Below are positions 5,227 through 28,423 of a DNA stretch of 64,000 nucleotides, in pieces. The DNA is taken from positions 1-64,000 of IMG/VR virus record IMGVR_UViG_3300043425_001539. One strand, 5' to 3'. The notes beneath the pieces are model-generated. The model worked only from the letters and a program-made list of their open reading frames with translations, was not told where the DNA came from and searched no databases. Both the position numbers and the translations under genes were made by a program. The first letter of the stretch is position 1, and each line of letters starts with the position of its first letter.

Positions 5227-5646
5227 TTAAAAAAATTTAAAAAATAAATAAGAGATAATAGCACTGCTTGCTATGAATCCTATTATAATCCAAGTTGTTA
5301 ATATTCTGAAAATTGGATAATAAACTAATAAATACGAATCAGTAATTTTTGTAGGATCTTCAGCATCAGGTATTTGCTCCACTGAAACCGTCACAAATTC
5401 GCTTAGACCTATTTTATCCATATACTTATGGATAGGCAACATTTTGTTTTGCGCTTTAATGCGCAACACTTCAGGTGAATCTCCTTTATCTTCGGGTGAT
5501 GGATTAATTACAGTATAAACTCTGCATATCCAATCTACTCTTAAACCATGTTTATTAAAATCCACGGTATTTTTATGTTTTTTAATTATGTTTCTAGCAA
5601 TTAGAAAACCTTTAATGTCATACCAAATAAGTTTTAATCTTAACAT
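5227..5646 (-). CDS. Hypothetical protein with a C-terminal TM helix
   Basis: Overlaps the stop of the sigma gene; hydrophobic C-terminus. Confidence 0.6.
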   Translation of the reverse strand: MLRLKLIWYDIKGFLIARNIIKKHKNTVDFNKHGLRVDWICRVYTVINPSPEDKGDSPEVLRIKAQNKMLPIHKYMDKIGLSEFVTVSVEQIPDAEDPTKITDSYLLVYYPIFRILTTWIIIGFIASSAIISYLFFKFF

Positions 5647-6251
5647 GTTTCTTGATATCTTTTTACTAAATCAGAATTTTTTTGAATTAAATTTTGCCGA
5701 ACCAATTCACGGGCTTTGCGAATACGAGTCCTAACGGTGTTATGTTTCCAGCCAAGCTCTTCGGCTATATCTTCGTACTTTTTCTTTTGAACTTCTCTTA
5801 ATGTTAATACGATTTTATAAATATCTGGAAGTTCTTCAATAGCACTAAGTGCTTCACTGTACAATAAATCAATTGGATTTTCTTCTTGTTCGTAAACATC
5901 TTCGTGGTGTGGAGATTTCTTTTCCATATTAATTCCTTGCTCCTCCATACCTTCGTAGGAATAAATCCGTTTACGGCCACGGTGAAATAAAAGAGCTTCA
6001 TTTCGAGCAATTCGGTAAACCCATGTACTGAAGTTCCAATAAGGATCGTATTGTTCGATTTTACTCCATACCTTTGCAAAGGTTGTAGCAATTACCTCAT
6101 TGCGGTCATCTTGATTTGGTACCAATTCTCTAAGGTAATATGAGATGCTAGGCTTAAGTCTTGCATACACTCGAGAAAAATCCATTTCGGTGCGAGTATT
6201 AAAGAAAGACATACCCATTTCTTGTAATGATAATTCTTTTTCCTTTTTCAT
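5640..6251 (-). CDS. RNA polymerase sigma-70 factor, ECF subfamily
   Basis: Region 2 (TFAKVWSKIEQYDP..FSTWVYRIARNEAL) and region 4 (AIEELPDIYKIVLTLRE..KYEDIAEELG..NTVRTRIRKAR). Confidence 0.9.
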   Translation of the reverse strand: MKKEKELSLQEMGMSFFNTRTEMDFSRVYARLKPSISYYLRELVPNQDDRNEVIATTFAKVWSKIEQYDPYWNFSTWVYRIARNEALLFHRGRKRIYSYEGMEEQGINMEKKSPHHEDVYEQEENPIDLLYSEALSAIEELPDIYKIVLTLREVQKKKYEDIAEELGWKHNTVRTRIRKARELVRQNLIQKNSDLVKRYQETC

Positions 6252-6277
6252 ATAATCAGTTGTTTAATTAATTACAA

Positions 6278-6337
6278 TACAAATATACAACTAATTATTG
6301 AAATAAAAAAATTTTTTTCACAAAAGTTATTAACAAT
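6278..6337 (-). promoter_or_regulatory. Early (host-sigma) promoter, Bacteroidota TAnnTTTG type, upstream of the ECF sigma gene
   Basis: TATATTTG at 6280-6287 (minus); the 60-bp block is 52/60 identical to 22988-23047. Confidence 0.75.
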
Positions 6338-6793
6338 TTAAAAATTTTTTTCGAGGTTATTAATATTACATCCGATAATTCCAGCATGACTAAAAATTTC
6401 GGATAGGTGGGAAACTTCTCTGTATTCGTTAAGCCAATAGATGTGTTTAAAACCAGCATTAACCAAAACTTTTGCACACATTTTACATGGAGAATGTGAA
6501 ATTATAATTATGTAATTTTCAGGATCAGTTTCTCGGAATTTTGCAACCAAATTAATTTCAGCATGAATCATTCCGCTTTTTCCAGGCTCAAGGCTATCTT
6601 CCTCTGTTCCAGTTGCAGGATTAATTGGAGCATTTGAATAACTTCCATTATATCCAAATGCTCCAATTTTAGAAAAATCTTTTTTTAGTGCAATGGCTCC
6701 TACTTTAAGGGAAGAAGAAACAGATAAATTTGCTATCTGATTAACTATTTCCTTAAATGATTCAATTTTCTGTAGAAACCTCTTGTCCTTCAT
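6338..6793 (-). CDS. dCMP deaminase
   Basis: HAE..SPCKMC zinc motif; KVGA and GYNG motifs. Confidence 0.9.
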   Translation of the reverse strand: MKDKRFLQKIESFKEIVNQIANLSVSSSLKVGAIALKKDFSKIGAFGYNGSYSNAPINPATGTEEDSLEPGKSGMIHAEINLVAKFRETDPENYIIIISHSPCKMCAKVLVNAGFKHIYWLNEYREVSHLSEIFSHAGIIGCNINNLEKNF

Positions 6794-7019
6794 TAACTTC
6801 TATTACATTTTGTTTAATTGTTGCAAAGAATTCGGCTACTTCTGCGTAAGGAAATTCTGATAATAGAGCAATAAAAGAATTTAATTCATCTTCAGTATAA
6901 ATAAATCCTTCGCGATTAATTAAATTCATATACGGAAAAATTGTGCCGTATTTTAATTTTTGTAACAATTCCGTTATTCTTTCTTTAAATTCTGGAGTGA
7001 CTTGAAAAGTTTTTTGCAT
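6762..7019 (-). CDS. Hypothetical protein
   Basis: 85-aa ORF directly behind a middle-type promoter. Confidence 0.65.
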   Translation of the reverse strand: MQKTFQVTPEFKERITELLQKLKYGTIFPYMNLINREGFIYTEDELNSFIALLSEFPYAEVAEFFATIKQNVIEVNEGQEVSTEN

Positions 7020-7036
7020 TGTTTAAATTTTTAATA

Positions 7037-7064
7037 TTATATTACAAAATGATGAATAGTTCTT
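7037..7064 (-). promoter_or_regulatory. Middle-type (ECF-like) promoter GAACT-N14-AATATAA
   Basis: Motif recurs upstream of replication and nucleotide genes. Confidence 0.65.
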
Positions 7065-7071
7065 GAAATTA

Positions 7072-7266
7072 TCAGTCTTCTAAATCCTTGTTTGTACTAC
7101 GAATAAACGGTGTAAAAAATACTTTTTGATCCTGAAATGCTTTATGAAACATTTCAAAACCTTTATCACCTTCAGCAGGCTGTGCCACATATTTAGGCGG
7201 TTCGTAGTTGCTGGTTAACCCTTCTTCAAAGTCAACAAATTTTTGTGTTTTTTTATTCTTGGTCAT
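7072..7266 (-). CDS. Hypothetical protein
   Basis: 64-aa ORF overlapping the end of the upstream gene. Confidence 0.5.
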   Translation of the reverse strand: MTKNKKTQKFVDFEEGLTSNYEPPKYVAQPAEGDKGFEMFHKAFQDQKVFFTPFIRSTNKDLED

Positions 7267-7573
7267 GGCTTATTCCTTCTATATTTTTCTTTTTGGCAAT
7301 ATCTTTAGCTTCTGATAAATCTTGTTTCTTTTTAACAAGTTCAGCTTTTTCAATATCTAATTTTTTTAGTTTAATATCTAATTCCAAAATTTGAGCATCA
7401 TAAGATTTTTTTTCTCTAACCGCCTTTTTTCTTAATTCTATTAAATCTTCAAGCTCAGCAATTAATTGCGCCGTCGACGGTTCTTTTTCTAATTTTGTTT
7501 CCGCCTTTTCTTTATTTTCAGTAATTTCATATTTGGTTTTTTCCCAATCGGTGAATTTAACAAAATTGCTCAT
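7253..7573 (-). CDS. Hypothetical coiled-coil protein
   Basis: K/E-rich; late-type motif at 7591-7603. Confidence 0.6.
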   Translation of the reverse strand: MSNFVKFTDWEKTKYEITENKEKAETKLEKEPSTAQLIAELEDLIELRKKAVREKKSYDAQILELDIKLKKLDIEKAELVKKKQDLSEAKDIAKKKNIEGISHDQE

Positions 7574-7607
7574 TGCAAATATTTTTTTTATAGTTTATAT
7601 ATTATAA

Positions 7608-13031: not shown

Positions 13032-16000
13032 TTATGCTGCGCTAAAACCGCCTGAACTAATTCCGCCTGTTTTTAGTACAGTAATTCTGTTAATGAATTT
13101 TTGTAATCCGCGAGAAGGCTCTATAGCAATATCAATTACGCCAAAGTTTTGGTCTATGATTTCTGCAGTATTATTGGTTTCATCCATGATAACAGAGTAT
13201 GCAAAAATTCCTCCACCGTTTCTGACTACATCCAAATAATTTTCAACGATTGTTTTAATTTCAAGTCGAGTAGTTGCATCATTAAATTCAAACAAATATT
13301 GTTGTAAAATTTCGATAACAGCTGTTTCGATAGTAATTAACAAGTCTCTTACGTGCAAATTATTAAATGCTGATAAAGTTCTTTGATATGCTGTTTGATT
13401 TGCAAAAATCATTGGACCAACATTTTTGACGTTGGTTATTGGGTTTAAGCCAAACGGCTCAAGATTTTCTCTATCAGACAACAGATAATCATATTCCATC
13501 CCAACAAATCTAGGGTTAGAAATTACACCTCTTCTTGGACCAGCTACGATTGCATAAGGAGTTCCATTAATAAATTTGCGAACAAAGTTATTTGAAACAT
13601 CAGCAGCGGGTGGAATACTCTTGTTTTTAGCATTCTCACGAATTATAAGATTTGGTGTAAATACGCCTATAAATTTTGCTCCTTGCTCTTCATCAGGTAA
13701 ACCCCAAACAAAAGATGGACCTAATGAAAGATTTCCTCCTGTTGAAATATAAAATGTATTTAATACAGGTGCAGGATTACCAGCCTGTGGGTCAGGCAAT
13801 TCAGTAAATCTTGGATCAGTACTTGCTTGAAATTCTGCAATTGACGGAGCATTAATAATTGCTAAACATTGCTGACGATTCTTTGCAAGGCGGCTAAGAA
13901 TTTGTTTAGACCCCATGTTTGGCTGAAGACCAAGATTGAAAGTATCAACAATATATCTAAATGTTATTACATCATCCGATGCAAGCGTTTTTGCAAGATT
14001 TGTGTTTTCAAGAACACCGTATATTTTATCAAGTTGCGCGTCGGTATTATTAGGCAAATGATAGTCGGTTAACGTAAATCCTGACAATGCAGTAAATTGG
14101 AAACGATCAGCAAATTTTTGAATTGATTGATAGCATGTAACATAAGTTAAACCGCTCGTTACCGTAGTTTTTGGCGTAACAAGTGTAGAATATTCAAAAT
14201 AAGGTACACCCGTAACAGGATCGGTTTTCTTAACTTTAGAAACTATCCGTGTCAAGAAAGTTTCAGTGTTATCCACTAAATAATCGCCAACCTCAATTTT
14301 AGCGCCGTTTGTTGAAGAAAGCTTAAACTTTTTACCTCCATCATAAAGACCCGGCGCTTCAATTTTGACGTTCTCGGATATGTTCTTTGCAATTGACGAG
14401 TAAAAAGCAACATAATTTAACGATCCGCCATCATCATATATGTTTGCATCTACGTAAGTTTCATTAACATCAGCAAATGTAGAATTTGCGGGCGTTAAAA
14501 GAGAACTGTCTGTAAACTGTTTAACGGATGCTCCTTTTAAGCCATAAGCAATACCGCTATATGCATCTACTATTCTGCTATAATTTGGTGTAGCAGCTAC
14601 ATAGTTAAATGATGAAGATCCTGATCCGTACTTAATTCTATCGCCGTCAATAACCAATTGATTATTAATATTATTAGCAAGAATTGCTCCTGGGTATGCT
14701 TCAATAATTGCATACTCAGCAATATTAGTATTATCTAAGTTAAATGCACCTGATACAACCGTTGCTGAAGTAGCCAATACTTCACCAGTAATTACCTTTC
14801 CATTTAAAAGAGTTACTTCAATAACATCGCCTAAAGTACCGCCATTAAAAGGATTACCTGTCGTTGTATCCACAACTCGTATTTTACCAAAATCAGCATC
14901 TGTTGTGTTGATTTCCCATCCTTTCAAATACCAAGAACCAGATATTGCGGTTGATGTTGTTACGTTATACAAGGTTACAAGATTTCCATTATCATCAGCA
15001 ACAGTTCCAGCAGGATTTAACAATGATACACCGTCAATTTTGCTGTAAGTATATGTAGGATTTAGGATATATGTAATTTCATCGGTTGTTGCAAGATCAG
15101 GTACTAAAAAATCTGCTTCATCAACGCTGACGTCAAGTAAAGTAATTGCTAAATCTGATGGCTGCAAGAATGAAGAAAATTCATCAGCAGCAAACCCAGC
15201 TGTACAAAATTTATCTCGATAAAAAGGAGCGCCTGTTGTTAACGTTGTTGCTACCGTAAGTTGAAACCCTCCTGTTATGCCAGTTACTGCATCAATTTCA
15301 AAATACTTAGCATATCCAGCTGCTTCAATTAAAATAATGTCGCCTGCCGCGGGAGTAAAAGATGGGAAGTTAACATTAATCTGATTTGCAATAGTTGGAA
15401 TTGTTAAAACTTCGCCTTCTTCTATATAGTTTGCAATATATGACGCATCGCTATTTAACGGATTACTCAACGGAGCAATGAAAAAATCTCCTGAATCAAT
15501 TATGTTATCTACTTTAACATAATCGCTTGGCGCTGCTGAATTGAACAAAGTATTTGTTCCATAAGTAGCAATTAATGAATTTGTATTTAATCCTCTCAAA
15601 AGAGCGTCATACATGGAAGGAGTAAATACCGTATCTGTAGGAACTGGTTTATAAACAACAAGTTGATTTAAGAATTTACCATTATTGCCTCCATAAGGAT
15701 ATGATGTTACATAAGGTTCTACAGAATCACCTGCAGTATCAAAAGGTTGAGCTAATTCATCGCCTGCTAAAGAATCTTGTCCATTGTACGAAAGAATGTT
15801 TTTAAGTGGCGTATTATATGAAAGAAAATCCAACACTTCATCAGTTGAATTTATTAATGAGTGACCTACCATATCTACTTTATAAGTAGAGTTTGCATAG
15901 TCATCAAGAGCCTTTTCATTAATGTTTAAAAACAATCCAGTAAGCGCGGTTGCTTGATTAACAATTACATCAATTGATTGATTAACGCCATTGTTATCAA

Positions 16001-16814
16001 TAAAGTTTGGTATTACACAACCTGTAAAAGTTCCAAGCAATGTTACGCCGTCAAGACTTAAAAAGTTTTCTAATTGGTTTGATTTAATGCCTCTTGCATC
16101 AAAATACTTAGACCAAACAGGATCTTTTGACAGCGAAGGTAAATCTGACCAATTTCCTTTGACTACAAATACATCAACAAAATAATCCGATACGTAATCA
16201 GTTGGATTAACGTATTCTGGAACATCGTCAGTTCCAAAATAATCTTGTGCTGTAATATTATACAACGAAGCATTTACAGATTTACGAATAATAATACTCG
16301 TTTCTTGTTGGCTTAAATTAACCAGGTTAAACAGTCTTCCTCTGTTTGCTGGTTTGCTATCAACAGTTGCCTGTAAATAATTTGTATCAGCAAACCAAAA
16401 TCTTTCTTTATTATAAAAAGAAGAAAGAAGGGCTTCTGTTACTGTTCCGTTTTCTCCAGCAGCTTCGAGTGAAAAAGACCTGTATTGAACAGCGTCTCCG
16501 CCTTCGTTTGCTGGAATGTTGTTAAGCGGAAGAAGATTGAGAGCAAATATTGGTGCTGATTGTAAGCACGTTTCAATCGCACGGTGAAAAAATGATCCAC
16601 GTTTTTCCAAGTATGCATCAATTGGTCCAAACACTCTTCGTGCTGTTGCAACGTCTCTTAAAAATACTGGAGCATTAAAAGGTCCTATACGAGAAAAACC
16701 TACCACAAGACGAACCGTTTGTGACGTAACCACTATTCTCTCAGACGCATCAAATTCTACGGTATAAACACCTGATGCCTTAAATTGGTTTAGATCAAGC
16801 GTGATTTTTGCCAT
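13032..16814 (-). CDS. Contractile tail sheath protein (gp18-like) with a large central insertion
   Basis: N-terminal ASGVYTVEFDAS..GPFNAP; C-terminal AGPRRG, LHVRDLLI, LFEFND..TR, DETNNT.EIIDQN. Confidence 0.9.
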   Translation of the reverse strand: MAKITLDLNQFKASGVYTVEFDASERIVVTSQTVRLVVGFSRIGPFNAPVFLRDVATARRVFGPIDAYLEKRGSFFHRAIETCLQSAPIFALNLLPLNNIPANEGGDAVQYRSFSLEAAGENGTVTEALLSSFYNKERFWFADTNYLQATVDSKPANRGRLFNLVNLSQQETSIIIRKSVNASLYNITAQDYFGTDDVPEYVNPTDYVSDYFVDVFVVKGNWSDLPSLSKDPVWSKYFDARGIKSNQLENFLSLDGVTLLGTFTGCVIPNFIDNNGVNQSIDVIVNQATALTGLFLNINEKALDDYANSTYKVDMVGHSLINSTDEVLDFLSYNTPLKNILSYNGQDSLAGDELAQPFDTAGDSVEPYVTSYPYGGNNGKFLNQLVVYKPVPTDTVFTPSMYDALLRGLNTNSLIATYGTNTLFNSAAPSDYVKVDNIIDSGDFFIAPLSNPLNSDASYIANYIEEGEVLTIPTIANQINVNFPSFTPAAGDIILIEAAGYAKYFEIDAVTGITGGFQLTVATTLTTGAPFYRDKFCTAGFAADEFSSFLQPSDLAITLLDVSVDEADFLVPDLATTDEITYILNPTYTYSKIDGVSLLNPAGTVADDNGNLVTLYNVTTSTAISGSWYLKGWEINTTDADFGKIRVVDTTTGNPFNGGTLGDVIEVTLLNGKVITGEVLATSATVVSGAFNLDNTNIAEYAIIEAYPGAILANNINNQLVIDGDRIKYGSGSSSFNYVAATPNYSRIVDAYSGIAYGLKGASVKQFTDSSLLTPANSTFADVNETYVDANIYDDGGSLNYVAFYSSIAKNISENVKIEAPGLYDGGKKFKLSSTNGAKIEVGDYLVDNTETFLTRIVSKVKKTDPVTGVPYFEYSTLVTPKTTVTSGLTYVTCYQSIQKFADRFQFTALSGFTLTDYHLPNNTDAQLDKIYGVLENTNLAKTLASDDVITFRYIVDTFNLGLQPNMGSKQILSRLAKNRQQCLAIINAPSIAEFQASTDPRFTELPDPQAGNPAPVLNTFYISTGGNLSLGPSFVWGLPDEEQGAKFIGVFTPNLIIRENAKNKSIPPAADVSNNFVRKFINGTPYAIVAGPRRGVISNPRFVGMEYDYLLSDRENLEPFGLNPITNVKNVGPMIFANQTAYQRTLSAFNNLHVRDLLITIETAVIEILQQYLFEFNDATTRLEIKTIVENYLDVVRNGGGIFAYSVIMDETNNTAEIIDQNFGVIDIAIEPSRGLQKFINRITVLKTGGISSGGFSAA

Positions 16815-16864: not shown

Positions 16865-16874
16865 TCTATATATC
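16865..16874 (-). promoter_or_regulatory. Late-type promoter GATATATAGA upstream of sheath/tube
   Basis: Shared ATATATA motif. Confidence 0.55.
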
Positions 16875-16895: not shown

Positions 16896-18722
16896 TCATC
16901 TTCTTCGTTTTTCATATGCATTATTTATTAATTGTTGAGTCATCTGAAAAGGATCATCGCTGAATTGTTTAACTATTCTAAATGCATCTAAGAAATCATC
17001 AGCAGCTTTGTCACCTAGCGCCATTCGTTGGTCTATTGCTTGGATTGTTTTACTCGGTATTGTATCATACATATCTTCAACCATTTCAAAATAATCAATA
17101 GAATCAAATAATGCAACCATATTAACTACTGATAACGCAACATCATCATGCGCTATCTGTGATTCATATCTGCCAACATTATTTACACCAAATGCTGAAA
17201 GTTCTTCAAAAGTTCGAGGCTCATTAATAATAATTCTTCTGTCTTTTGCATAATTTCTCATTTCTCGGAAATAAGATTCTCGATTATCTTTTTGTAGCTT
17301 TATCCCAATTTTTAATTGGTCATTTGCCATTGACTGCTTTGTGTGTAAGAATATTTCTGGGTAATAATCTTTATTTTTAGCAATCCTATCAATAATTGCA
17401 TGCCCTTTAAAGTTTATTTCCAATATTATCTTTACACTTTCATAATGGAATAGTTCAAATGTTAAAATTTCTAAAACTTTTGCAACTTCTTCAACAGAAT
17501 GTGCATTTGATCTAAATAGTCCCACTTGCAAAAGTCTAAAAAACGAAGATTCATCAGCCCAATCTTTAGTTTTTCTAATTTTTGCCGGTGATTTAGGAAT
17601 AAGCTTAAATATATTAATGATTGAGTAATCTCTGCCTACGCCATCTCCTAAATCGACAGACAAAACAAATTTATCCCCGCGTTCATCAAAATCAACAGCA
17701 GGATCAAAGTTAGGGTGCCATTTAAGCATTGCACTTAAATCCGGGTAATCTAATAAAGCATCTAATTCCACCCACCGATATTCTTTGCATGTTTTTTTCA
17801 TTAACATCAAAGTATTATGATCAAATAATAATCTAGATGACGCTAAGAATTGATTACCATATTCTTGATTAAATAATTCTTCTGAACCTAAATTGGCAAT
17901 TTCGCGTTTCTTCCAGTCTTCGTCTCTCCCAGGTACTTGCCACCAATCAACTCTAATAGGCTTAAAGTTATTATTTCCTTCAATTGCGGATTGATAAATT
18001 TCATAAAATAAATTCATACCATTTGGTGTTGATGATATGATCATTCTTGAAACTTGTGAAGATGATAGTGTTGGGTAAATTGACCTATAAAAAGGCGATA
18101 AGAAATTGCTATGAATATGAGCAAACTCATCCGCATACAGTAAGTGAATTGTAAATCCAATCGCCGCGGTTTTGGTAGTTGCTTGAGAAAATAAACGATT
18201 CCCATTATCAAATCGCATACCTGTTATACCACCTGATACTACACCAGGCTTCATAAAATATGGAAGATTTTTTAAAATCGTTTTAATTTTATCTACTATC
18301 TCATTGGTAGTTGCCAATTTATTTGCAACTACTAATATATTTCTATCAGAGTGAAATGTTACATACCAGGCAATAAAAATTGAAGACGTAACGGTTTTAC
18401 CGATCTGTCGGCTGGCAAGCATAATTACAAAACGGTTATCTTGAAATGATTCAAGCATATCTTCTTGATATGGGCGCAACGTAATTTGCCGAATTCCTTC
18501 ATCGGTCATAGAGTGACAATACTTGTTACCAAAATAAACCACATCTGATGCGCATCTTGCTAATTCTGTCATTTCTTCTCGCGTATACTCAAATACCACA
18601 TCAGCAGCTTTTGTATCAATTTTACCGTCAAAAAAAGGAGACGTATCAGCTGTTAGACCGTTTTCAATACGTTCAATTTCTTCATTAATTCTTTTAGTGT
18701 TCCATATCTTCCCTTTCGCCAT
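16896..18722 (-). CDS. terL: Terminase large subunit (T4 gp17-like)
   Basis: LRPYQ, ASRQIGKT Walker A, LLYADEFAH Walker B, SSTPNG, nuclease DLGDG..DYS..HDD. Confidence 0.95.
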   Translation of the reverse strand: MAKGKIWNTKRINEEIERIENGLTADTSPFFDGKIDTKAADVVFEYTREEMTELARCASDVVYFGNKYCHSMTDEGIRQITLRPYQEDMLESFQDNRFVIMLASRQIGKTVTSSIFIAWYVTFHSDRNILVVANKLATTNEIVDKIKTILKNLPYFMKPGVVSGGITGMRFDNGNRLFSQATTKTAAIGFTIHLLYADEFAHIHSNFLSPFYRSIYPTLSSSQVSRMIISSTPNGMNLFYEIYQSAIEGNNNFKPIRVDWWQVPGRDEDWKKREIANLGSEELFNQEYGNQFLASSRLLFDHNTLMLMKKTCKEYRWVELDALLDYPDLSAMLKWHPNFDPAVDFDERGDKFVLSVDLGDGVGRDYSIINIFKLIPKSPAKIRKTKDWADESSFFRLLQVGLFRSNAHSVEEVAKVLEILTFELFHYESVKIILEINFKGHAIIDRIAKNKDYYPEIFLHTKQSMANDQLKIGIKLQKDNRESYFREMRNYAKDRRIIINEPRTFEELSAFGVNNVGRYESQIAHDDVALSVVNMVALFDSIDYFEMVEDMYDTIPSKTIQAIDQRMALGDKAADDFLDAFRIVKQFSDDPFQMTQQLINNAYEKRRR

Positions 18723-19372: not shown

Positions 19373-21364
19373 TTATTTAGATTTTGCTATCCATGGTAAG
19401 CTTAATCGAGGAATTGCATTATCTATGATGATGCTGAATTGCGCATCTTGTACAATTGCCTGGTTAAGCATATTTATCTGTTTAATTTGCTCAGTTTCTA
19501 TTTTATCATATAACCTAACATTGGTAATAACTAAGTTTGACGCTAATAAATTATAATTCATATCAGCTGACGCATCAAGTTTATTAATTGTTTCTACAGC
19601 GCTATATATATTTTCCAAATCTGTTGTTTGTATTGGATTTGGATTTGATTCATTCCATTTTCTAACCCATAAATCAACTGACAGCTGGCGATAAAAATTA
19701 GATATATTTATAAACAAGCCATACCAATAATCTTGTACCAAATTGTTTTTAAATATAAACATTGAGGCTGTTTCGTTTCTTTGAACTATCAAATATCTAC
19801 TTGCATAAATACTAATTTTAATTCCTTTTGAATTTTCTTGTTTAAAACCATTAAACAAAATGTTTTCAAACGTCTTTTCAGCAATATATCCGCTACCAGA
19901 AGGTCCTGACCAATTAGGATAATATAAATTTAAAAATTCAATAATATTTTTTGAGACGGAAATTGTATAATTAAATCCACCAGAAACAGCGGTTGTACTT
20001 TTCCATGCCCCATATAAAGATAATCCATTAAATTTTGATATTTTAATTAAATCGCCTGCCACATATTTCCTGGTTGCAGCAAGTTTAAATGTAATATCTT
20101 GTAGATCATTATTAATTTGTCCTAATATTAATCCACCTTTAATATTATCTTTTGGAATAACTATATTTGGATTAATTTCTTTAAACCAACAACTAAAAGA
20201 CCTTTCAGCGGATTCGGGTAAATCCACATTTGCTCTATACTTAACAGCTTCAATTCGAGAGTTAACATTAAAAATTGAACGTAAATCATATTGTGATTCG
20301 GATAATAATAAAGAATAATTATTAACTTTCTGTTGTGTTATTATAAGATCATTATTTACCACTTCTCTTATTGGGTCATAATTTCTTGAACCTATCTTTG
20401 GGTCAAATTGCTGTGGATCAGTTGTTTTAATTTCAAGCAAATCTAATTCTTCTTGGAACTCTTCTTGATAACTTGTTGTAAGAACGTCAAATTCTTCTCT
20501 AAGATTTTGGGTTTCTTTGCGGTTTGCCTTGGGTTGATATTTTGTTAAACTTACTTTCCAATAAATTTCTGTTCGCATTAAATCTTTATAAAGATATGAA
20601 CTATCAACTTCATATATTCTATTTTCAAGAGGCATATAAATAATATCCCTCTTTTGCGGAGCAGTTCCTACTCCAAATAATTCCTCAAAATAATTTTTAG
20701 TAATGTGAACCTCAAATGGCATTTCAAAGTCAATGCCCATAGGGTTAAAATTTAATTTGCTATCGGGAAATTCATTTTGCGGAACAACTACTTTAATACA
20801 TTTAGGTTCATCAACATCATAGAGCGTCCATTCATTAAGAATTATGTCTTTACCTATTTCCATAGGTACGGCCCTTGCATACATTACATCAATTCCAAAC
20901 AATTGATTAATGGTAAAAGATAATTCTTTATATAAGATAACAAGAGGATTAACTTGATATGGTTTAAAAGTAAAATTTTCAATTTTTGTGATATTGCTAA
21001 TGTTACCTTTATCTGAAACTGTATAAACAGGTACAAATCCTATATAAGGATCTTGTGCTATAGGATCTTGTTCGTATGTAATTTCTATGTTATTAATAGT
21101 TATAGGACCGCCAGCAATTAATGTTATTTTAAAATCAACAAACAAATCATCATTAGGATCAAGTATAATACTATTTAAAGAACTTTGGGTAAGGTCAACC
21201 CAAGAAGACCTTACCCTATTTGTTGTGCCCCAACGCACCTCTTTTTTATATGTTCCGCTGCCCGCTATATCTTCTAACCATCCTGTAAGTTTGGTAACAT
21301 ATAAAAAAGGTGCGTCTTGCGTAAATTTAACAAAATCACCTGGGCTTGTTAGTATAGCTTGCAT
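19373..21364 (-). CDS. Neck/head-completion protein (gp14-like core) with extra beta-rich domains
   Basis: INQLFGIDVMY..PQKRDIIYMPLENRIYEV resembles gp14; late motif at 21381-21395. Confidence 0.55.
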   Translation of the reverse strand: MQAILTSPGDFVKFTQDAPFLYVTKLTGWLEDIAGSGTYKKEVRWGTTNRVRSSWVDLTQSSLNSIILDPNDDLFVDFKITLIAGGPITINNIEITYEQDPIAQDPYIGFVPVYTVSDKGNISNITKIENFTFKPYQVNPLVILYKELSFTINQLFGIDVMYARAVPMEIGKDIILNEWTLYDVDEPKCIKVVVPQNEFPDSKLNFNPMGIDFEMPFEVHITKNYFEELFGVGTAPQKRDIIYMPLENRIYEVDSSYLYKDLMRTEIYWKVSLTKYQPKANRKETQNLREEFDVLTTSYQEEFQEELDLLEIKTTDPQQFDPKIGSRNYDPIREVVNNDLIITQQKVNNYSLLLSESQYDLRSIFNVNSRIEAVKYRANVDLPESAERSFSCWFKEINPNIVIPKDNIKGGLILGQINNDLQDITFKLAATRKYVAGDLIKISKFNGLSLYGAWKSTTAVSGGFNYTISVSKNIIEFLNLYYPNWSGPSGSGYIAEKTFENILFNGFKQENSKGIKISIYASRYLIVQRNETASMFIFKNNLVQDYWYGLFINISNFYRQLSVDLWVRKWNESNPNPIQTTDLENIYSAVETINKLDASADMNYNLLASNLVITNVRLYDKIETEQIKQINMLNQAIVQDAQFSIIIDNAIPRLSLPWIAKSK

Positions 21365-21412
21365 TTAAAATGGGATACTATTTTTTCTATATATCCCATA
21401 AAGAAAATCAAT

Positions 21413-21829: not shown

Positions 21830-21859
21830 GTATATTATATTCTTTTGATTAAAAAGGTT

Positions 21860-22966
21860 TTAAAAATTGAATTGGGAAAAGATATCTGCCTCAATAGGTT
21901 TGCCGTTACTAACAAAACGTGTTCCTTCTAGCAAAGAGTTCATATCATAGGAGCGTGAACCCAAATCTTTATATTCTTGATTTATCGAAATTTTAAATTT
22001 TTCTTGAATATCTGAAGGGATTATACGTTCATCAAGAAATACCAATTGTAAATTTCTTACTAATCTTGATTTAATAACTTCAGAAGGAGCTGAATGTTTA
22101 CAAGTAGTTTCAATTGCCTTTGCAACTTCAGTTGCACGATTAGGTAAATCAAATACGTCATCAACATTTTTTGACATATTTAAAATATCATACATTCTTT
22201 TTGCTTTTGATGCAGTCACTCGATAAGTTTTGTTATCTTTAGTCCAAGACCAAATAGGAGGAACTGCATCACCAGCATCTCCTGTAATAACCTTTTCAAA
22301 TATAATGTATTTGTGATCAATTTCTTCAAGTGGCATTGAACCAAGCGCATCTGAAATGATATCTTTGGAGCGATTCATATATGTGTTTGCATCAAAAAGA
22401 TTATATTCTTCGGATTGCAGCCAGGATTGAAAACCCAATGATGAAGTTATTTTGCGACTTTTGGAATTTGGGTTATACACAACCACAAAATTTTTGTCAT
22501 TATGTTTAACACATTGTGTTAAATCCCGATCGCCAGTAATAATTACTGCGTCTGATCCTTCGTTAAAAAAATGATTAGCCCACAAAAACATTAAATCATC
22601 GCCTTCAGCGCGTTCTTCTCGGGAAATAATAATATTTTTAGATTTTAGAATTTCTGCAAATTCATTCATGCAGCCATAAAAAGCATCCCAATCTATAGAT
22701 GAAGATTTTTCTTCTCGATGTCCTTTATATGCGCCATCTTCAATTTCAATATCCTTACGCCAAGATTTTGAATCAATTGTAAAAACTATTTTATTTGGAT
22801 TACCAAAAACACGAACAGCGTGTGAAAAATCAGTTGCAACTTTTCGAACAAACATTTCTTGCTCTTTCTTGCTTTCCAAAACCTTTCCTTTTGAAGCGTA
22901 CCCACCAAATATGAATAGCGTTTTATAAAAGAGGTAATTTCCGTCTATAATTAAATTTAATGCCAT
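21860..22966 (-). CDS. RNase H / 5'-3' flap exonuclease (T4 rnh-like)
   Basis: LIIDGN, YKGHR, AEGDD, TGDRDL.Q, GDAGDAVP motifs. Confidence 0.88.
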   Translation of the reverse strand: MALNLIIDGNYLFYKTLFIFGGYASKGKVLESKKEQEMFVRKVATDFSHAVRVFGNPNKIVFTIDSKSWRKDIEIEDGAYKGHREEKSSSIDWDAFYGCMNEFAEILKSKNIIISREERAEGDDLMFLWANHFFNEGSDAVIITGDRDLTQCVKHNDKNFVVVYNPNSKSRKITSSLGFQSWLQSEEYNLFDANTYMNRSKDIISDALGSMPLEEIDHKYIIFEKVITGDAGDAVPPIWSWTKDNKTYRVTASKAKRMYDILNMSKNVDDVFDLPNRATEVAKAIETTCKHSAPSEVIKSRLVRNLQLVFLDERIIPSDIQEKFKISINQEYKDLGSRSYDMNSLLEGTRFVSNGKPIEADIFSQFNF

Positions 22967-22987: not shown

Positions 22988-23047
22988 TACAAATATACAA
23001 ACTTTAATTGAAATAAAAAAATTTTTTCAAAAAAAGTTATTAACAAT
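22988..23047 (-). promoter_or_regulatory. Early (host-sigma) promoter block, TAnnTTTG type
   Basis: TATATTTG at 22990-22997; repeat of 6278-6337. Confidence 0.75.
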
Positions 23048-23282: not shown

Positions 23283-23593
23283 AATTTTTCGACATTTTCA
23301 CCTTTTGGATATTTGTTTCTAATATTTGACACGAAAAAATTACCTTTTGATTCGGAATTTAAAAAATCCAAATATAATTCTTTATTAAATTTTTTATATT
23401 TATATCGAGCATCATTACTAAATGTTATAATAAATTCTTCAAGTTCTTCAGAATATTCGGTTGTCTTAAGCAATGAAGATTCCCATGTACATTTTTCAAA
23501 TCCATTGATAAATTCAGTTGAATGAGCTGAATTAGGAATAGCATTAGTGTCAGCTTTTTGCATAATATTTATTGGTTTAAAATTATTTGACAT
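23279..23593 (-). CDS. KTSC-domain protein
   Basis: SSLLKTTEY..ITF....RYKY..Y..FLNSESKGNFFVSNIR. Confidence 0.75.
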   Translation of the reverse strand: MSNNFKPINIMQKADTNAIPNSAHSTEFINGFEKCTWESSLLKTTEYSEELEEFIITFSNDARYKYKKFNKELYLDFLNSESKGNFFVSNIRNKYPKGENVEKL

Positions 23594-24519
23594 TCATAAA
23601 CGGCAGCAAGCATAGAAATTGCAGGATCAATGACATGTACTCGCTGTGATTGATAGTGAGCAACTTTAATTAAAATTTGGGGTATTCTTGCAGATTTTCC
23701 TGGGTGGTTATCACGTATAAAATCAGGCAATTCATTTCCTAAAGCAAACAAGACATCATCAACTTTTGACGAATAATTTGTCATTAAGAATTTATAATTT
23801 TCTTGCGGATCACCTGTTTTACAGACGAGTTCAAAAACATCACGGAAAGAGTAATTTAATTTTTTAACATCAGTAACTTCAATTTTTTTAACTCCTTGAA
23901 TTACAAATGATTGTATCTTATTTATAATCGAACGCATATCAGGAAAATTTCTTTTGACAAATTCCACAATAGCATCCTTTTCAATCTCAATTCCACAAGA
24001 TTTAAAAATTGTCCATGATCGTTTAATAAATTCGACCATTACTTCTTTTTCTTCCTCTTTGGAAATAAAATCAAAATTTACACATGTAAAACGGGATTGC
24101 ACTGGATCAGGAACTTTATTAATATAATTACAAGTACCAATAAAGCGAGCGGTTGTTGCAAATTTTTCAATAGTTGCTCTCAATGCTTTATAAAATTGAT
24201 CCGATGCACCATCCATCTCATCAAGAATCACAACTTTGTATAATTCTCCGCCATCAAGCAAACTTATAGTTGAACACCAATTTGTAATTTTTTCGCGAAT
24301 GATGTCAACCGAACTTTCATCTGAGACATTAATGTATAAATACGGATACTTATCGGCTAGTACTTTTGCCAAAGACGTTTTTCCTAAACCTGGTGATCCG
24401 TAAAATAAATAGTTTTGATGTAAAACTCCATCGCCGATTGATTTTCTAATCCTTGCAGGCAAAATCATTTGTTCCAATGATTTTGGCCTGTACTTTTCTG
24501 TGAATAATTCTCCAATCAT
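23569..24519 (-). CDS. Clamp loader large subunit (gp44/RFC AAA+)
   Basis: EKYRP, GSPGLGKT, VVILDEMD, QSRF, FPDMR. Confidence 0.93.
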   Translation of the reverse strand: MIGELFTEKYRPKSLEQMILPARIRKSIGDGVLHQNYLFYGSPGLGKTSLAKVLADKYPYLYINVSDESSVDIIREKITNWCSTISLLDGGELYKVVILDEMDGASDQFYKALRATIEKFATTARFIGTCNYINKVPDPVQSRFTCVNFDFISKEEEKEVMVEFIKRSWTIFKSCGIEIEKDAIVEFVKRNFPDMRSIINKIQSFVIQGVKKIEVTDVKKLNYSFRDVFELVCKTGDPQENYKFLMTNYSSKVDDVLFALGNELPDFIRDNHPGKSARIPQILIKVAHYQSQRVHVIDPAISMLAAVYECQIILNQ

Positions 24520-24540: not shown

Positions 24541-24568
24541 TTATATTCTAAATAGTATACTTAGTTCT
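24541..24568 (-). promoter_or_regulatory. Middle-type promoter GAACT-N15-AATATAA
   Basis: Shared motif, upstream of the clamp loader. Confidence 0.65.
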
Positions 24569-24573
24569 TATTG

Positions 24574-24615
24574 AATAAAAAAAACGTATGAATTTATATC
24601 CATACGTTTTTTATT
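24574..24615 (-). terminator. Terminator after the portal gene (probably bidirectional)
   Basis: AAAAAACGTATG/CATACGTTTTTT inverted repeat. Confidence 0.7.
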
Positions 24616-24630
24616 AATAATTAACTAATA

Positions 24631-26244: not shown

Positions 26245-26287
26245 ATTTTTTGTTTAGTTTTGTTTTATTTATTTCTAAAAAATAATA

Positions 26288-26980
26288 TTATTTTTTGTTC
26301 TTATTTAATGTTTGATTTTTAAATACAGTGTAATCTGCATAAATTTGAGCAGGACTTTTTCCTTCTATTTCGCGAGGAACATAAAATGGTATCATACTCC
26401 AATCTTCAATTTCAATTAATACTGGGTTTAAAATTCCTGTTATATCATAATTTCTAATAATAAATGTCAATGGAATTTTTCCTTGATTTACAAAAACTTT
26501 GGTCATAAATGTCCAATCGCTTAAATAACGAGCAATATTTTTTGCTTGCCCTATCAATCCTTTATCAGAATCTCGTTCAGCGTTCAATAAGTTGTTTTTA
26601 AAAACTTTATAATATGTATCAAGCAATTCAACTTTTTGAAGTTCAGGCACAAAATTAAGATTAATCCCTTGAAGAATAACTCTATTTGTTGTTTTTGCTA
26701 AAAATGTATTCATTACTAAAAGCATTGGTCTTGTATCATAATAACTTAAAACATCCTTTGTAATAGGATCAGGATATCTAAATGTATAAATTGAGCCTGG
26801 TAAGAAAAAATTAATTTTTCTTGCTATGAATCGAGATTCTTCTTCTATAATCCAATAATTCTCAAACGGATTTTTTACATACTTGTCTTCAAAAAACTGA
26901 AATGCTTCTTTTCTTATACCAGTTTTTTGATTTGAGATATAAAAATTTTTAATATCTATATGTTCATCGTTTTCTATCAC
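26288..26980 (-). CDS. DNA end protector (T4 gp2-like)
   Basis: PGSIYTF.Y..YYDTRP, GINLNFVP, IEDW motifs. Confidence 0.7.
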   Translation of the reverse strand: MIENDEHIDIKNFYISNQKTGIRKEAFQFFEDKYVKNPFENYWIIEEESRFIARKINFFLPGSIYTFRYPDPITKDVLSYYDTRPMLLVMNTFLAKTTNRVILQGINLNFVPELQKVELLDTYYKVFKNNLLNAERDSDKGLIGQAKNIARYLSDWTFMTKVFVNQGKIPLTFIIRNYDITGILNPVLIEIEDWSMIPFYVPREIEGKSPAQIYADYTVFKNQTLNKNKK

Positions 26981-27465
26981 TGTTGTTCAAACAAGAATTT
27001 TTCTGTTACTATTACAAATTTATACCCCACTGATTCTGCATACTTTTTTGCATATTGAAATTTGGCACGATTAGTTATCCAAGTCTGTAAAGAATAATTG
27101 TAATTTTTTAGTCTTTTTATTGTTTGACTCCCGCTTTCCATAACAGGTTTAGCAAGACTTGCTTCAGGTTTAACTTCAACTAAATAATCTTCTTCTTTAT
27201 CTCCTTTTTTAACCTTTGCATAAAAATCAATATAATAAGTATGCTCTTTGTTATCTATTGGACTAATGTATTTAATCCCTAAAGGTTCTGAAGACCACTT
27301 AATAATATTTTCGCTATCATCACAATACTTACAAAATCTATATTCCCAGGATGACCTGTAAATAATTTTAGTGGGGTCTCCAATATATTTGTCCGGGTTA
27401 TTTAAAACATAATAACCTTGACGATATGTACTTTTTTTTGATGGCTTATTATTTTTAATGCTCAT
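26977..27465 (-). CDS. Head completion nuclease (T4 gp4-like)
   Basis: NPDKYIGD..IIYRSSWE..WSSE..YYIDF..LVEVKP. Confidence 0.9.
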   Translation of the reverse strand: MSIKNNKPSKKSTYRQGYYVLNNPDKYIGDPTKIIYRSSWEYRFCKYCDDSENIIKWSSEPLGIKYISPIDNKEHTYYIDFYAKVKKGDKEEDYLVEVKPEASLAKPVMESGSQTIKRLKNYNYSLQTWITNRAKFQYAKKYAESVGYKFVIVTEKFLFEQQ

Positions 27466-27472
27466 TATTGCC

Positions 27473-27817
27473 TTATAGACTATAAAGGTTTTCGTTACTT
27501 AATGAAAGTTTATCAACGTCTCTAATAGGATGTAATTTTTTCCAACCTTTTGCAAAACCATTTTTAATTATTTGAGTGTAATAAGCAAAAGGATAATTTG
27601 ATTTAGCTGGGTCAAAACTTCGCCAATATTTAATTACATCCATAAGAGCAAACGCAATAACATCTTTGCGGTCTTCTTCGTTTTTGTATTTTAATTTTTT
27701 GGACGACTCTTTTGCCATTAATTGAAGCATTTCAATCGCACGAGGTGTTAATTCATCTTTTTCTTTTGATAAAAGAATTTCTTTTTTAAATTCTTCCGGG
27801 TCTACATAATTTGCCAT
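27473..27817 (-). CDS. Late-transcription sigma factor (T4 gp55-like)
   Basis: NYVD..EF, FDPAKSNYPFAYYTQIIKNGF. Confidence 0.85.
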   Translation of the reverse strand: MANYVDPEEFKKEILLSKEKDELTPRAIEMLQLMAKESSKKLKYKNEEDRKDVIAFALMDVIKYWRSFDPAKSNYPFAYYTQIIKNGFAKGWKKLHPIRDVDKLSLSNENLYSL

Positions 27818-27823
27818 AGTTAG

Positions 27824-28423
27824 TTAGTTTATTGAACCGCTTGCTAATGTTTCGGATTCAGAGTCTATTGATGATAAAAATGATTTAAAATCTGATATTG
27901 ATTTATCAATAAAATCATGTGAAATATCAGAGTTATCTTTAATAAATGTTTTTAATTCTTCCAATGAAAAAAGAACTTCTCCAGCTTTGTCTCCGACAGC
28001 AGCAAGTAATGCGCCTGATTTATCAGGTTTATTTTCTGAAGTTTTTGGATTGGATTTAACATCCGTTTCAGAATTATATACTCCAGTTTCATAAAGGTTC
28101 TTTTTCTCTAATATATTAATTGGTTGTAAAAAGCTCTTTTTAATTAACTTTTTTTTTCCTGCACCATAAACTATTTCCACATCGTCATTATCTCCACGGC
28201 TAGTAAAATCAAGAGCTTTCATTTTTACTTCTTCCCCATACCCGGGAATTAATATTTTAGCTCTTACATAATCATCAGCCTCCCTAATCCCAACTGAGGC
28301 GCCGTCAACTTGAGTGGTTATTTCAAGATCGTTTCCTGGTTGGGATTGGGAGGCTGGTTTATGATTTTTTAAATCAGCAGGTTTAACATCATACGTTCTG
28401 CCAGACTCGTCTTCAACTGTCAC
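27824..28423 (-). CDS. Hypothetical protein; probably the -1 frameshift extension of 28456-30018
   Basis: Only a GTG start; the frame is open back to the A9 slippery run at 28460-28468. Confidence 0.6.
   Translation of the reverse strand: MTVEDESGRTYDVKPADLKNHKPASQSQPGNDLEITTQVDGASVGIREADDYVRAKILIPGYGEEVKMKALDFTSRGDNDDVEIVYGAGKKKLIKKSFLQPINILEKKNLYETGVYNSETDVKSNPKTSENKPDKSGALLAAVGDKAGEVLFSLEELKTFIKDNSDISHDFIDKSISDFKSFLSSIDSESETLASGSIN
27827..27852 (-). promoter_or_regulatory. Middle-type promoter variant AAACA-N14-AATAAAC just upstream of the gp55-like gene
   Basis: Same spacing as the other copies but a weaker match. Confidence 0.4.

What the first reader, a model, noticed from the sequence alone, without database searches (positions are those of the whole stretch)
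5640..27852. Three-tier sigma cascade: host sigma, phage ECF sigma, gp55
Seen: the ECF sigma gene lies directly behind a TAnnTTTG promoter. A second motif precedes replication genes and, more weakly, the gp55-like gene (27827-27852). A third motif precedes virion genes and HEGs. Established: T4 uses MotA/AsiA for middle genes and gp55 for late genes; SPO1 uses a sigma cascade; many ECF sigmas read AAC-containing -35 boxes. Inference: a T4-like phage that uses an ECF sigma for middle transcription.
Basis: partly seen in the sequence, partly recalled or inferred. Interest (0 to 1): 0.72.

Follow-up and report, generated by a model that had tools for sequence, protein, structure and literature searches.

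The report
Three promoter classes, two phage sigmas
An uncultivated freshwater T4-like jumbo phage of Bacteroidota carries three clearly different promoter types (host-type, an ECF-sigma-type two-box promoter in front of replication genes, and a single-box gp55-type promoter in front of virion genes), but the gp55 gene itself is not behind the second type, so a strict sigma-to-sigma-to-sigma relay is not shown.

Summary
The window is the first 64 kb of a 238,475-bp IMG/VR phage contig from freshwater metagenomes. It is T4-like and nearly all genes are on the minus strand.

All three motif classes are real, strand-specific, gene-proximal and conserved in relatives.
- **Early:** 19 copies of a ~70-nt stereotyped Bacteroidota sigma-A-type promoter (-7 box TATATTTG). 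One copy lies 29 nt upstream of the ECF sigma gene (5640-6251).
- **Middle:** (A/G)AAC(T/C)-N14/15-(A/T)ATATAA, 24 sites against 3.0 expected. Every annotated first gene is a replication or nucleotide-metabolism gene.
- **Late:** ATATATA(A/G) with no -35 information. It precedes tail sheath, neck and terminase, a gp15-like gene and homing endonucleases.

Only two sigma-like genes were found: an ECF-family sigma and a 114-aa gp55 homologue. No MotA or AsiA was found.

There, gp55 sits behind late-type motifs.

No transcript data exist, so which sigma reads which motif is inference.

Verdict: a new variant of a known kind. Observation largely confirmed; interpretation partly supported.

The parts
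5640..6251 (-). ECF-type (group IV) sigma factor, 203 aa
   Evidence: Pfam r2 + r4_2; TIGR02937 above cut-off; PDB ECF sigmas E~1e-11 over residues 25-188; more than 200 protein clusters down to about 60% identity, some on contigs up to 317 kb
5227..5646 (-). 139-aa protein overlapping the sigma stop codon by 7 nt, with a C-terminal hydrophobic helix; conserved partner gene of unknown function
   Evidence: Present directly downstream of the sigma gene in all 22 relatives at 42-75% identity; AF2 model pLDDT 84 with no fold match; complex prediction gave no answer
6262..6333 (-). Early (host sigma-A type) promoter of the ECF sigma gene; -7 box TATATTTG at 6280-6287
   Evidence: TAnnTTTG conserved upstream of the sigma gene in 14 of 22 relatives, variant TTATWTTTA in the others
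22990..22997 (-). Early promoter -7 box in front of exonuclease 21860-22966 (PHROG 107)
53789..53796 (-). Early promoter -7 box in front of NAD-dependent DNA ligase 51940-53769
7037..7061 (-). Middle promoter (PWM 21.3) before an 85-aa ORF and dCMP deaminase, upstream of the sigma gene; no terminator predicted before the sigma gene
21835..21859 (-). Middle promoter (23.3) before a 138-aa ORF of unknown function
24541..24566 (-). Middle promoter (23.2) before clamp loader 23569-24519
37051..37076 (-). Middle promoter (21.2) before DnaB-like helicase 35743-37044, followed by SbcD and SbcC
40431..40456 (-). Middle promoter (23.3) before UvsX-like recombinase 39204-40409
43279..43304 (-). Middle promoter (25.9) before DNA polymerase C-terminal half 42084-43262
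45370..45395 (-). Middle promoter (22.5) before gp45-like sliding clamp 44608-45351
47433..47457 (-). Middle promoter (27.6) before topoisomerase II subunit 46010-47404
61191..61215 (-). Middle promoter (23.1) before MazG/dUTPase-like 60689-61171 and DNA polymerase N-terminal half 59281-60657
27473..27817 (-). gp55-like late sigma, 114 aa, sigma region 2 only
   Evidence: PHROG 234 at 1.6e-13; T4 gp55 (7d7c_F) is the top PDB hit, E 0.05; full-length conservation in the closest relatives and 257 relatives found in IMG/VR
27827..27852 (-).
   Evidence: PWM 3.5 bits; not conserved
16866..16873 (-). Late promoter ATATATAG (15.8) before tail sheath 13032-16814
21387..21394 (-). Late promoter (13.6) before head-closure/neck protein 19373-21364 and large terminase 16896-18722
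31716..31723 (-). Late promoter (14.9) before the run gp15-like, 540 aa, 199 aa, gp55, gp4, gp2, portal
   Evidence: conserved at about -3850 from gp55 in relatives
30045..30052 (-). Weaker late motif (10.5) before the 520/540-aa ORF upstream of gp55
   Evidence: a late motif at about -2250 from gp55 recurs in relatives
39160..39167 (-). Late promoter (15.1) before homing endonuclease 38112-39149
43362..43369 (+). Late motif on the + strand, 27 nt before the ATG of the + strand homing endonuclease (ORF 43342-44463)
57079..57086 (-). Late promoter (13.4) before a 473-aa ORF inserted between the two halves of the RNR large subunit
59286..59293 (-). Late motif (15.0) 6 nt before the RNR small subunit; an exception to the class-function rule
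5214..5221 (-). Late promoter (12.7) before a 189-aa ORF, directly after the sigma/139-aa pair
7595..7602 (-). Late promoter (13.9) before a 106-aa ORF
48246..48253 (-). Late promoter (16.5) before a 119-aa protein (PHROG 858, regulator-like)

Best explanation
The phage has three promoter classes, each read by a different RNA polymerase holoenzyme built on host core enzyme.

1. Host sigma-A reads 19 stereotyped Bacteroidota-type promoters. Most sit in a block of small ORFs at 193-234 kb. Three are isolated, in front of the ECF sigma gene, an exonuclease and DNA ligase. So the ECF sigma is made early.
2. The ECF sigma has regions 2 and 4. It most likely reads the two-box class (A/G)AAC(T/C)-N14/15-(A/T)ATATAA. 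That class drives the clamp loader, sliding clamp, helicase, UvsX, both DNA polymerase halves, topoisomerase II, nucleotide enzymes and the tRNA clusters. One such promoter lies upstream of the sigma gene with no predicted terminator between, so feed-forward expression is possible.
3. The 114-aa gp55 homologue has region 2 only. It most likely reads the single-box class ATATATA(A/G), which has no -35 element, in front of virion, packaging and homing-endonuclease genes.

The gp55 gene is not behind a recognisable middle promoter. It sits inside a late-type gene run. Its first expression would come from read-through, with the nearest middle promoter 9 kb upstream, or from a promoter not recognised here. 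The middle-to-late dependence may instead run through the middle-class clamp and clamp loader, as in T4.

Shown: the motifs, their positions, their conservation and the protein families. Inferred: which sigma reads which motif, and the timing.
For: - Motif statistics and positions.
- The late motif has no -35 information.
- First genes behind middle promoters are 9 of 9 DNA or nucleotide functions.
- In the window, all 7 annotated virion or packaging genes have a late motif as nearest upstream promoter. Of 17 replication or nucleotide genes, 14 have a middle or early one. Fisher p = 0.00035, but genes in one operon are not independent.
- Only two sigma-like genes in the record, and no MotA or AsiA.
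- E. coli-type sigma-70 promoters are not enriched.
- Conservation in 22 loci with ECF orthologues at 57-100% identity: middle PWM hits 23 on the coding strand against 0; late hits 78 against 5.
- Whole contigs with ECF orthologues at about 60% identity show 0/23 and 13/0 strand-exclusive hits.
- A contig whose ECF homologue is 37% identical keeps AAACT-N17-TATAA.
- Flavobacterium phage MaF61 and Chryseobacterium phage MA9V-2 lack this sigma and lack the motif.
- An AAC-containing -35 box with a 16-17 nt spacer is the usual ECF promoter layout (my own knowledge).
Against: - There are no transcript 5' ends or time-course data, and no RNA run was listed.
- The co-occurrence of sigma and motif is confounded by shared ancestry.
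- The middle -10 box and the late box share the core TATAA, so one recognition module reading both is not excluded.
- The -10 box is A/T-rich, unlike the CGT-type -10 of many ECF sigmas.
- Late motifs also precede the RNR small subunit and a glycosyltransferase.
- The record is estimated 84% complete, so a further regulator could be missing.
- No gp33 homologue was identified.
- Lak-B5 has an ECF-like sigma at 23% identity but no countable enrichment of the motif.
Confidence: 0.6

Rival explanations
1. A strict linear cascade: host sigma makes the ECF sigma, the ECF sigma transcribes gp55 from the site at 27827-27852, and gp55 then turns on late genes.
For: The first link is supported. An AAC...AATAAAC string does lie just before the gp55 ATG.
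Against: The site scores 3.5 bits, and about 170 positions in the genome score as well. In relatives the region is the 3' coding end of the preceding gene and scores negative. No middle PWM hit >=13 lies within 4 kb upstream of gp55 in 27 relatives, only late motifs.
Confidence: 0.08
2. The AAC-N-TATAA class is read by host polymerase with a host sigma, either a host ECF sigma or sigma-A helped by an unrecognised phage activator. The phage ECF sigma has another job, such as reprogramming host genes or running a small regulon.
For: No direct link between protein and motif was obtained. T4 itself uses host sigma plus phage adaptors. Many early ORFs are of unknown function. My own knowledge: Bacteroidota carry many ECF sigmas.
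Against: No MotA or AsiA was found. The motif is unlike the Bacteroidota sigma-A boxes. The motif is kept across phages carrying ECF homologues from 37% to 100% identity. It is absent from two Bacteroidota T4-like phages without this sigma. The sigma is a conserved gene with an early promoter.
Confidence: 0.2
3. Middle and late boxes are one -10 element (core TATAA) read by gp55. The AAC box is an upstream enhancer bound by another factor, so the classes differ in strength rather than in time.
For: The -10 of the middle class, (A/T)ATATAA, and the late box, ATATATAA, overlap in sequence. Late motifs occur before some nucleotide-metabolism genes.
Against: The sorting by function is sharp: 9 of 9 against virion genes. 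The AAC box sits at a fixed 14/15-nt spacing typical of a sigma region-4 contact. The only protein found with a region 4 is the ECF sigma.
Confidence: 0.1

Closest known systems
Bacteriophage T4 transcription programme (host sigma-70 early; MotA/AsiA sigma appropriation for middle; gp55/gp33/gp45 for late)
   Same: T4-like gene set: gp55 homologue, clamp, clamp loader, gp2, gp4, gp15-like, portal, sheath. Late promoters are a single -10-type box without a -35 box. HEGs sit behind late promoters. Replication genes form their own promoter class.
   Different: No MotA or AsiA was detected. The middle class is a two-box AAC/TATAA promoter with a phage ECF sigma as the likely reader. The late box is ATATATAR rather than TATAAATA. 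gp55 is only 114 aa. No gp33 was found. The early promoters are the Bacteroidota -7/-33 type.
Bacillus phage SPO1 sigma cascade (gp28, then gp33/34)
   Same: Successive phage-encoded sigma factors replace the host sigma on host core RNAP. The first phage sigma gene is read by host sigma.
   Different: In SPO1 each sigma gene is transcribed by the preceding holoenzyme (my own knowledge). Here the second link is not seen: gp55 has no middle promoter.
phiEco32 gp36 sigma, with gp79 (PMC12276001; phage 7-11, PMC8948821)
   Same: A phage-encoded distant sigma-70-family protein takes over after host-sigma-dependent early transcription. It contacts the -10 region and the -35 region.
   Different: phiEco32 is a podovirus with one phage sigma for both middle and late genes, a consensus AATGTA near -11.5, and a helper protein, gp79. 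Here there are two phage sigmas, two phage promoter classes and a T4-like myovirus background.
Group 2 jumbo phages with a 'minimal' and a 'fuller' sigma (Iyer et al. 2021, PMC7824862); Lak megaphages; 'moraphages' (PMC12619734)
   Same: Gene content. The co-occurrence of a gp55-type minimal sigma and a second sigma in T4-related jumbo phages, including Bacteroidota phages, has been noted. A core sigma orthologous group is reported for freshwater Bacteroidota jumbo phages. Lak phages are the nearest named relatives of gp55 and of the sheath.
   Different: Those papers, as read here, give no promoter motifs or regulons. The promoter-level assignment is what this locus adds. Membership of this contig in the moraphage lineage was not tested.

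Membership tests
ECF (group IV) sigma-70 family | Only sigma regions 2 and 4, about 200 aa | tested here: met
   Pfam r2 at residues 29-95 and r4_2 at 134-182, 203 aa; alignment to solved ECF sigmas over residues 25-188
ECF (group IV) sigma-70 family | Scores above the curated ECF superfamily model | tested here: met
   TIGR02937 68.2 bits against a cut-off of 42.9
ECF (group IV) sigma-70 family | Belongs to a named ECF subgroup or equivalog | tested here: not met
   Best is TIGR02985 (Bacteroides expansion family), 81.6 bits against a cut-off of 126.4; SigW and RpoE models are far below cut-off
ECF (group IV) sigma-70 family | The protein directs initiation at a two-box promoter with AAC in the -35 box | not testable with these tools
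   Such a motif class exists and is found in phages carrying homologues of this sigma, but binding or initiation was not measured
ECF (group IV) sigma-70 family | Co-transcribed cognate anti-sigma factor (common, not universal) | tested here: inconclusive
   A conserved 139-aa membrane-anchored neighbour is present. It has no Pfam hit and no fold match to anti-sigma domains. Complex prediction gave no answer
T4 gp55-type late sigma system | Homology to gp55 | tested here: met
   PHROG 234 'late sigma transcription factor' at 1.6e-13; T4 gp55 chain 7d7c_F is the top PDB hit at E 0.05; tblastn hits to annotated late sigma factors of cyanophages and Xanthomonas phage
T4 gp55-type late sigma system | Sigma region 2 only, no region 4 | tested here: met
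   114 aa with only a weak r2 match and no r4 match at this locus
T4 gp55-type late sigma system | Late promoters consist of one -10-type box without a -35 element | tested here: met
   Information content is about 0 at positions -40 to -2 from the box
T4 gp55-type late sigma system | Sliding clamp (gp45) available as activator | tested here: met
   44608-45351 matches gp45-slide_C and PCNA clusters at TM 0.77-0.83. Its role in transcription was not tested
T4 gp55-type late sigma system | gp33 co-activator | not tested
   No family accession was available for a search. The 199-aa gene coupled to gp55 gave no hit
T4 gp55-type late sigma system | C-terminal clamp-binding epitope shared with the DNA polymerase C-terminus | tested here: inconclusive
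   The gp55 tail ...LSLSNENLYSL and the polymerase tail ...LSPELIVRTQLF show only a loose resemblance
T4 MotA/AsiA middle mode | MotA and AsiA homologues | tested here: not met
   PF09114 and PF09010 gave no match at E<=1 in the record, which is 84% complete
Bacteroidota sigma-A promoter | -7 box TAnnTTTG | tested here: met
   TATATTTG in all 19 early elements
Bacteroidota sigma-A promoter | -33 box TTTG about 19-21 nt upstream | tested here: inconclusive
   9 of 19 copies have TTTG at 19-20 nt. The copy before the sigma gene has a T-run instead
Linear sigma cascade (SPO1 type) | Each sigma gene carries a promoter of the preceding tier | tested here: not met
   Tier 1 to 2 is met. Tier 2 to 3 is not: there is no conserved middle promoter before gp55

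The most novel reading that the evidence does not exclude
In a large, widespread clade of freshwater T4-related jumbo phages of Bacteroidota, sigma appropriation (MotA/AsiA) is replaced by a phage ECF sigma. That sigma comes as a fixed pair with a membrane-anchored 139-aa partner of a fold not seen before. The partner gates the sigma like an anti-sigma factor, so the early-to-middle switch would respond to a membrane or envelope cue. The late stage would be gated by the middle-class clamp and clamp loader rather than by transcription of gp55.
Probability: 0.12. Interest if true: 0.8.

Novelty: new variant of a known kind. Interest (0 to 1): 0.58.

Why it matters
As far as I know, transcription control in phages of Bacteroidota is essentially uncharted, and Bacteroidota promoters differ from the textbook type. 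My own knowledge: how T4-like phages without MotA/AsiA run middle transcription is an open question, for instance in the cyanophages.

This locus gives precise predictions that are conserved across the clade:
- three promoter consensus sequences;
- two candidate sigma factors;
- a defined regulon for each.

A simple in vitro transcription or reporter experiment could test them.

If the predictions hold, they would improve annotation of temporal classes in hundreds of uncultivated jumbo phage genomes. They would also supply orthogonal sigma/promoter pairs for engineering Bacteroidota.

Tried and rejected
- **gp55 split by a homing endonuclease:** rejected. The 'TnsA-like' ORF 26977-27465 is the T4 gp4-type head completion protein (PHROG 218). 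The 114-aa gp55 is conserved end to end in the closest relatives.
- **RNA evidence:** no RNA run was listed for the region. Only DNA metagenomes hold it.
- **Complex prediction of sigma with the 139-aa neighbour:** no answer, score 0.20 against a mark of 0.34. This counts neither for nor against binding.
- **AF2 model of the 139-aa protein (pLDDT 84):** no fold match in PDB or in AFDB clusters. The Atlas gave nothing for it or for the 199-aa protein.
- **Covariation between sigma and motif:** the strict pattern AACY-N14/15-WATATAA first seemed absent from a contig whose ECF sigma is 37% identical. De novo dyad search then showed the same AAACT-N17-TATAA motif with a different base before TATAA. 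So no covariation signal can be claimed, only conservation.
- **Annotation of late-class proteins:** PHROGs and Pfam left most of them unannotated. The class-function test therefore rests on few genes.
- **Clamp-binding tail shared by gp55 and the polymerase:** inconclusive.
- **MA9V-2 as a 'sigma-free' control:** corrected. It has another sigma-70_r2 ORF in an open frame of 393 aa, but no orthologue of this ECF sigma.
- **E. coli-type promoter scan:** not enriched.

Full report
**Context.** The window is bases 1-64000 of a single 238,475-bp contig. It is an IMG/VR virus record, linear, with a CheckV completeness estimate of 84%. The sequence is found in freshwater, subsurface and wastewater metagenomes. 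G+C is about 30%. A simple ORF call gives 318 ORFs, 295 of them on the minus strand. The gene content is T4-like. The tail sheath is nearest to Lak megaphages, an uncultured 462-kb phage and Flavobacterium phage MaF61. The window also holds portal, gp2, gp4, a gp15-like gene, large terminase, clamp loader, helicase, UvsX, topoisomerase II, SbcC/SbcD and RNR.

**The two sigma genes.**
- ORF 5640-6251(-) is a 203-aa ECF-type sigma. It has Pfam Sigma70_r2 and r4_2, scores above the cut-off of TIGR02937 and below the cut-off of every subgroup model, and finds solved ECF sigmas as its best PDB matches.
- It has more than 200 homologous protein clusters, down to about 60% identity among those listed. 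Some lie on contigs of 147-317 kb.
- ORF 27473-27817(-) is a 114-aa gp55 homologue. It matches PHROG 234 at 1.6e-13, and T4 gp55 is the top though weak PDB hit. It is nearest to Lak phage and cyanophage late sigma factors. The closest relatives match it from end to end, and 257 relatives were found in IMG/VR.
- Whole-record searches found no other sigma region 2 or region 4.2 gene above noise and no MotA or AsiA.

**Early class.**
- k-mer enrichment in upstream regions and direct listing show one element of about 70 nt, consensus ...AAAAAGTTG.CCAAAAATTTT...GTATATTTGTATATAATTAAAAAACAAC... It occurs 19 times, always on the coding strand. Shuffles predict 0.1 copies.
- It contains the Bacteroidota -7 box TAnnTTTG. 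In 9 of 19 copies TTTG lies 19-20 nt upstream.
- Sixteen copies sit among small ORFs at 193-234 kb. Three are in the window, before the ECF sigma gene (box at 6280-6287), an exonuclease (22990-22997) and NAD ligase (53789-53796).
- In 22 related contigs the sigma gene again follows TAnnTTTG (14 loci) or a variant TTATWTTTA.
- This confirms the first part of the observation.

**Middle class.**
- AAC(T/C)-N14/15-AATATAA gave 16 exact sites, 15 of them within 34 nt of a start codon.
- A two-block PWM found 28 coding-strand sites at >=14 bits against 1 on the other strand.
- The looser pattern with W at the first -10 position gives 24 against 6, with 3.0 +/- 1.9 in dinucleotide shuffles. 19 of the 24 lie within 60 nt of an ORF start, where 7.4% is expected.
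- The first genes behind these sites that could be annotated are clamp loader, DnaB-like helicase, UvsX, DNA polymerase C-half, topoisomerase II, MazG/dUTPase, thymidylate kinase and a DNA-binding protein.
- A 247-aa protein behind another site is a gp45-type sliding clamp by structure. That makes 9 of 9 in DNA or nucleotide metabolism.
- Two near-identical sites precede the tRNA genes.

**Late class.**
- ATATATA(A/G), usually preceded by G or A, has no information content anywhere in the 40 nt upstream.
- By PWM >=10 there are 52 coding-strand sites against 4, and 37 of the 52 lie within 45 nt of an ORF start.
- By pattern there are 54 against 13, with 30 +/- 5 in shuffles.
- In the window it precedes tail sheath, the head-closure/neck protein followed by large terminase, the gp15-like gene that opens the run containing gp55, gp4, gp2 and portal, a homing endonuclease, a 473-aa ORF inserted in the split RNR large subunit, and on the + strand a second homing endonuclease.
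- Exceptions are the RNR small subunit and, outside the window, a glycosyltransferase. Many late-class proteins have no family match.
- Taking the nearest upstream promoter for each annotated gene in the window, 7 of 7 virion or packaging genes are late, and 14 of 17 replication or nucleotide genes are middle or early. Fisher p = 0.00035, but genes in one operon are not independent.

**The gp55 link fails.**
155 positions on this strand reach 4 bits or more.
- In relatives this stretch is the 3' coding end of the preceding gene, with a stop codon about 10 nt before the gp55 ATG. It scores negative on the PWM.
- In 27 non-redundant relatives no middle site >=13 bits lies within 4 kb upstream of gp55. 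Late motifs recur at about -2250 and -3850.
- In this genome the nearest middle promoter upstream is the helicase promoter at 37076, with no convincing minus-strand terminator in between.
- So gp55 may first be made by read-through, or from a promoter not recognised here, and then reinforce itself from late promoters.
- A dependence of late on middle transcription could still exist through the clamp and clamp loader. Both are in the middle class, and in T4 the loaded clamp activates gp55 transcription (PMC2988020). This is inference.

The indirect evidence is as follows.
- The class has a fixed-spacing -35 box, which needs a sigma region 4. The ECF sigma is the only protein found with one.
- An AAC-containing -35 box and a 16-17-nt spacer are the common ECF layout (my own knowledge).
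- The class is conserved wherever the sigma is. In 22 loci with orthologues at 57-100% identity there are 23 coding-strand hits and none opposite. Two larger contigs with orthologues at about 60% identity have 23 and 13 strand-exclusive exact matches. A 323-kb contig whose homologue is only 37% identical keeps AAACT-N17-TATAA.
- MaF61 and MA9V-2 are T4-like phages of Flavobacterium and Chryseobacterium. They lack an orthologue of this sigma and lack the motif. MA9V-2 has a different sigma-70-family ORF.
- The host-type boxes are quite different, and E. coli-type promoters are not enriched.

Four things weaken the case. All the positive genomes are relatives. The middle -10 box and the late box share TATAA. 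Lak-B5 shows no countable enrichment. The record is incomplete.

**The sigma neighbourhood.** The order, conserved in relatives, is: middle promoter (7037-7061), 85-aa ORF, dCMP deaminase (absent from some relatives), early promoter, ECF sigma, 139-aa ORF, late promoter (5214-5221). No terminator is predicted between the middle promoter and the sigma gene, so the sigma could boost its own synthesis. The 139-aa protein overlaps the sigma stop codon, has a C-terminal hydrophobic helix and follows the sigma gene in all 22 relatives. It has no family, no fold match and no verdict in complex prediction. An anti-sigma or helper role is only a possibility.

**Comparison with what is known.**
- Phage sigma cascades (SPO1) and gp55 late sigma are textbook knowledge.
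- A phage sigma for middle and late genes is documented for phiEco32 (PMC12276001).
- The joint presence of a minimal and a fuller sigma in T4-related jumbo phages, including Bacteroidota phages, has been noted (PMC7824862).
- A recent paper on freshwater Bacteroidota jumbo phages lists a core sigma factor (PMC12619734).
- None of the papers found describes the promoter classes or assigns an ECF sigma to T4-type middle genes. That is not proof of absence.

I rate this a new variant of a known kind.

Noticed in passing
window 59281-60657 and 42084-43262: The family B DNA polymerase is encoded as two separate genes 16 kb apart. The N-half matches PHROG 262 positions 109-495 and the C-half positions 498-839. 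Each lies behind its own middle promoter.
   Followed up: partly
window 54567-58240: The RNR large subunit is split into 57110-58240 and 54567-55646. A 473-aa ORF of unknown family (55640-57061) lies between them and has its own late motif. It is probably a mobile insertion.
   Followed up: partly
window 43342-44463 (+): One of the few + strand genes is a homing endonuclease (PHROG 3339) next to the polymerase C-half. A late motif lies on the + strand 27 nt before its likely ATG.
   Followed up: yes
window 5227-5646: A 139-aa protein with a C-terminal hydrophobic helix is always found directly downstream of the ECF sigma gene in relatives. The confident AF2 model has no fold match, and its function is unknown.
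   Followed up: yes
genome 171454-171480 and 174264-174290 (L006): Two nearly identical middle-type promoters lie upstream of tRNA-Gly and of a cluster of six tRNA genes.
   Followed up: partly
window about 6322-6333 and loci L016, L029, L032-L035: A conserved box TGTTAATAACTT lies about 45-50 nt upstream of the -7 box of the sigma gene in this phage and in several relatives. It may be a regulator site or an UP-like element.
   Followed up: no
genome 193-234 kb (L007-L009): The early promoter is a ~70-nt near-identical repeat present 19 times. Such repeats could also act as recombination substrates.
   Followed up: no
window 44608-45351: A protein with no PHROG hit, and which the record-wide Pfam gp45 clamp search did not detect, is a gp45/PCNA-type sliding clamp by predicted structure, TM 0.77-0.83.
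   Followed up: yes
window 27824-28423: A 199-aa protein with an acidic, serine-rich tail precedes gp55, with its stop codon a few nt before the gp55 ATG, and the arrangement is conserved in relatives. No family or structure lead was found.
   Followed up: partly
record G002 (locus L108), 26731-27345: The ECF sigma homologue of a 230-kb relative has one in-frame TAG. This could be a recoded stop, as in Lak phages, or a broken gene.
   Followed up: no
record G001 (loci L121-L137): A 323-kb relative uses a different stereotyped early element whose -7 box is GGTTATATTTA instead of TATATTTG. This suggests a host lineage with a variant sigma-A consensus.
   Followed up: partly
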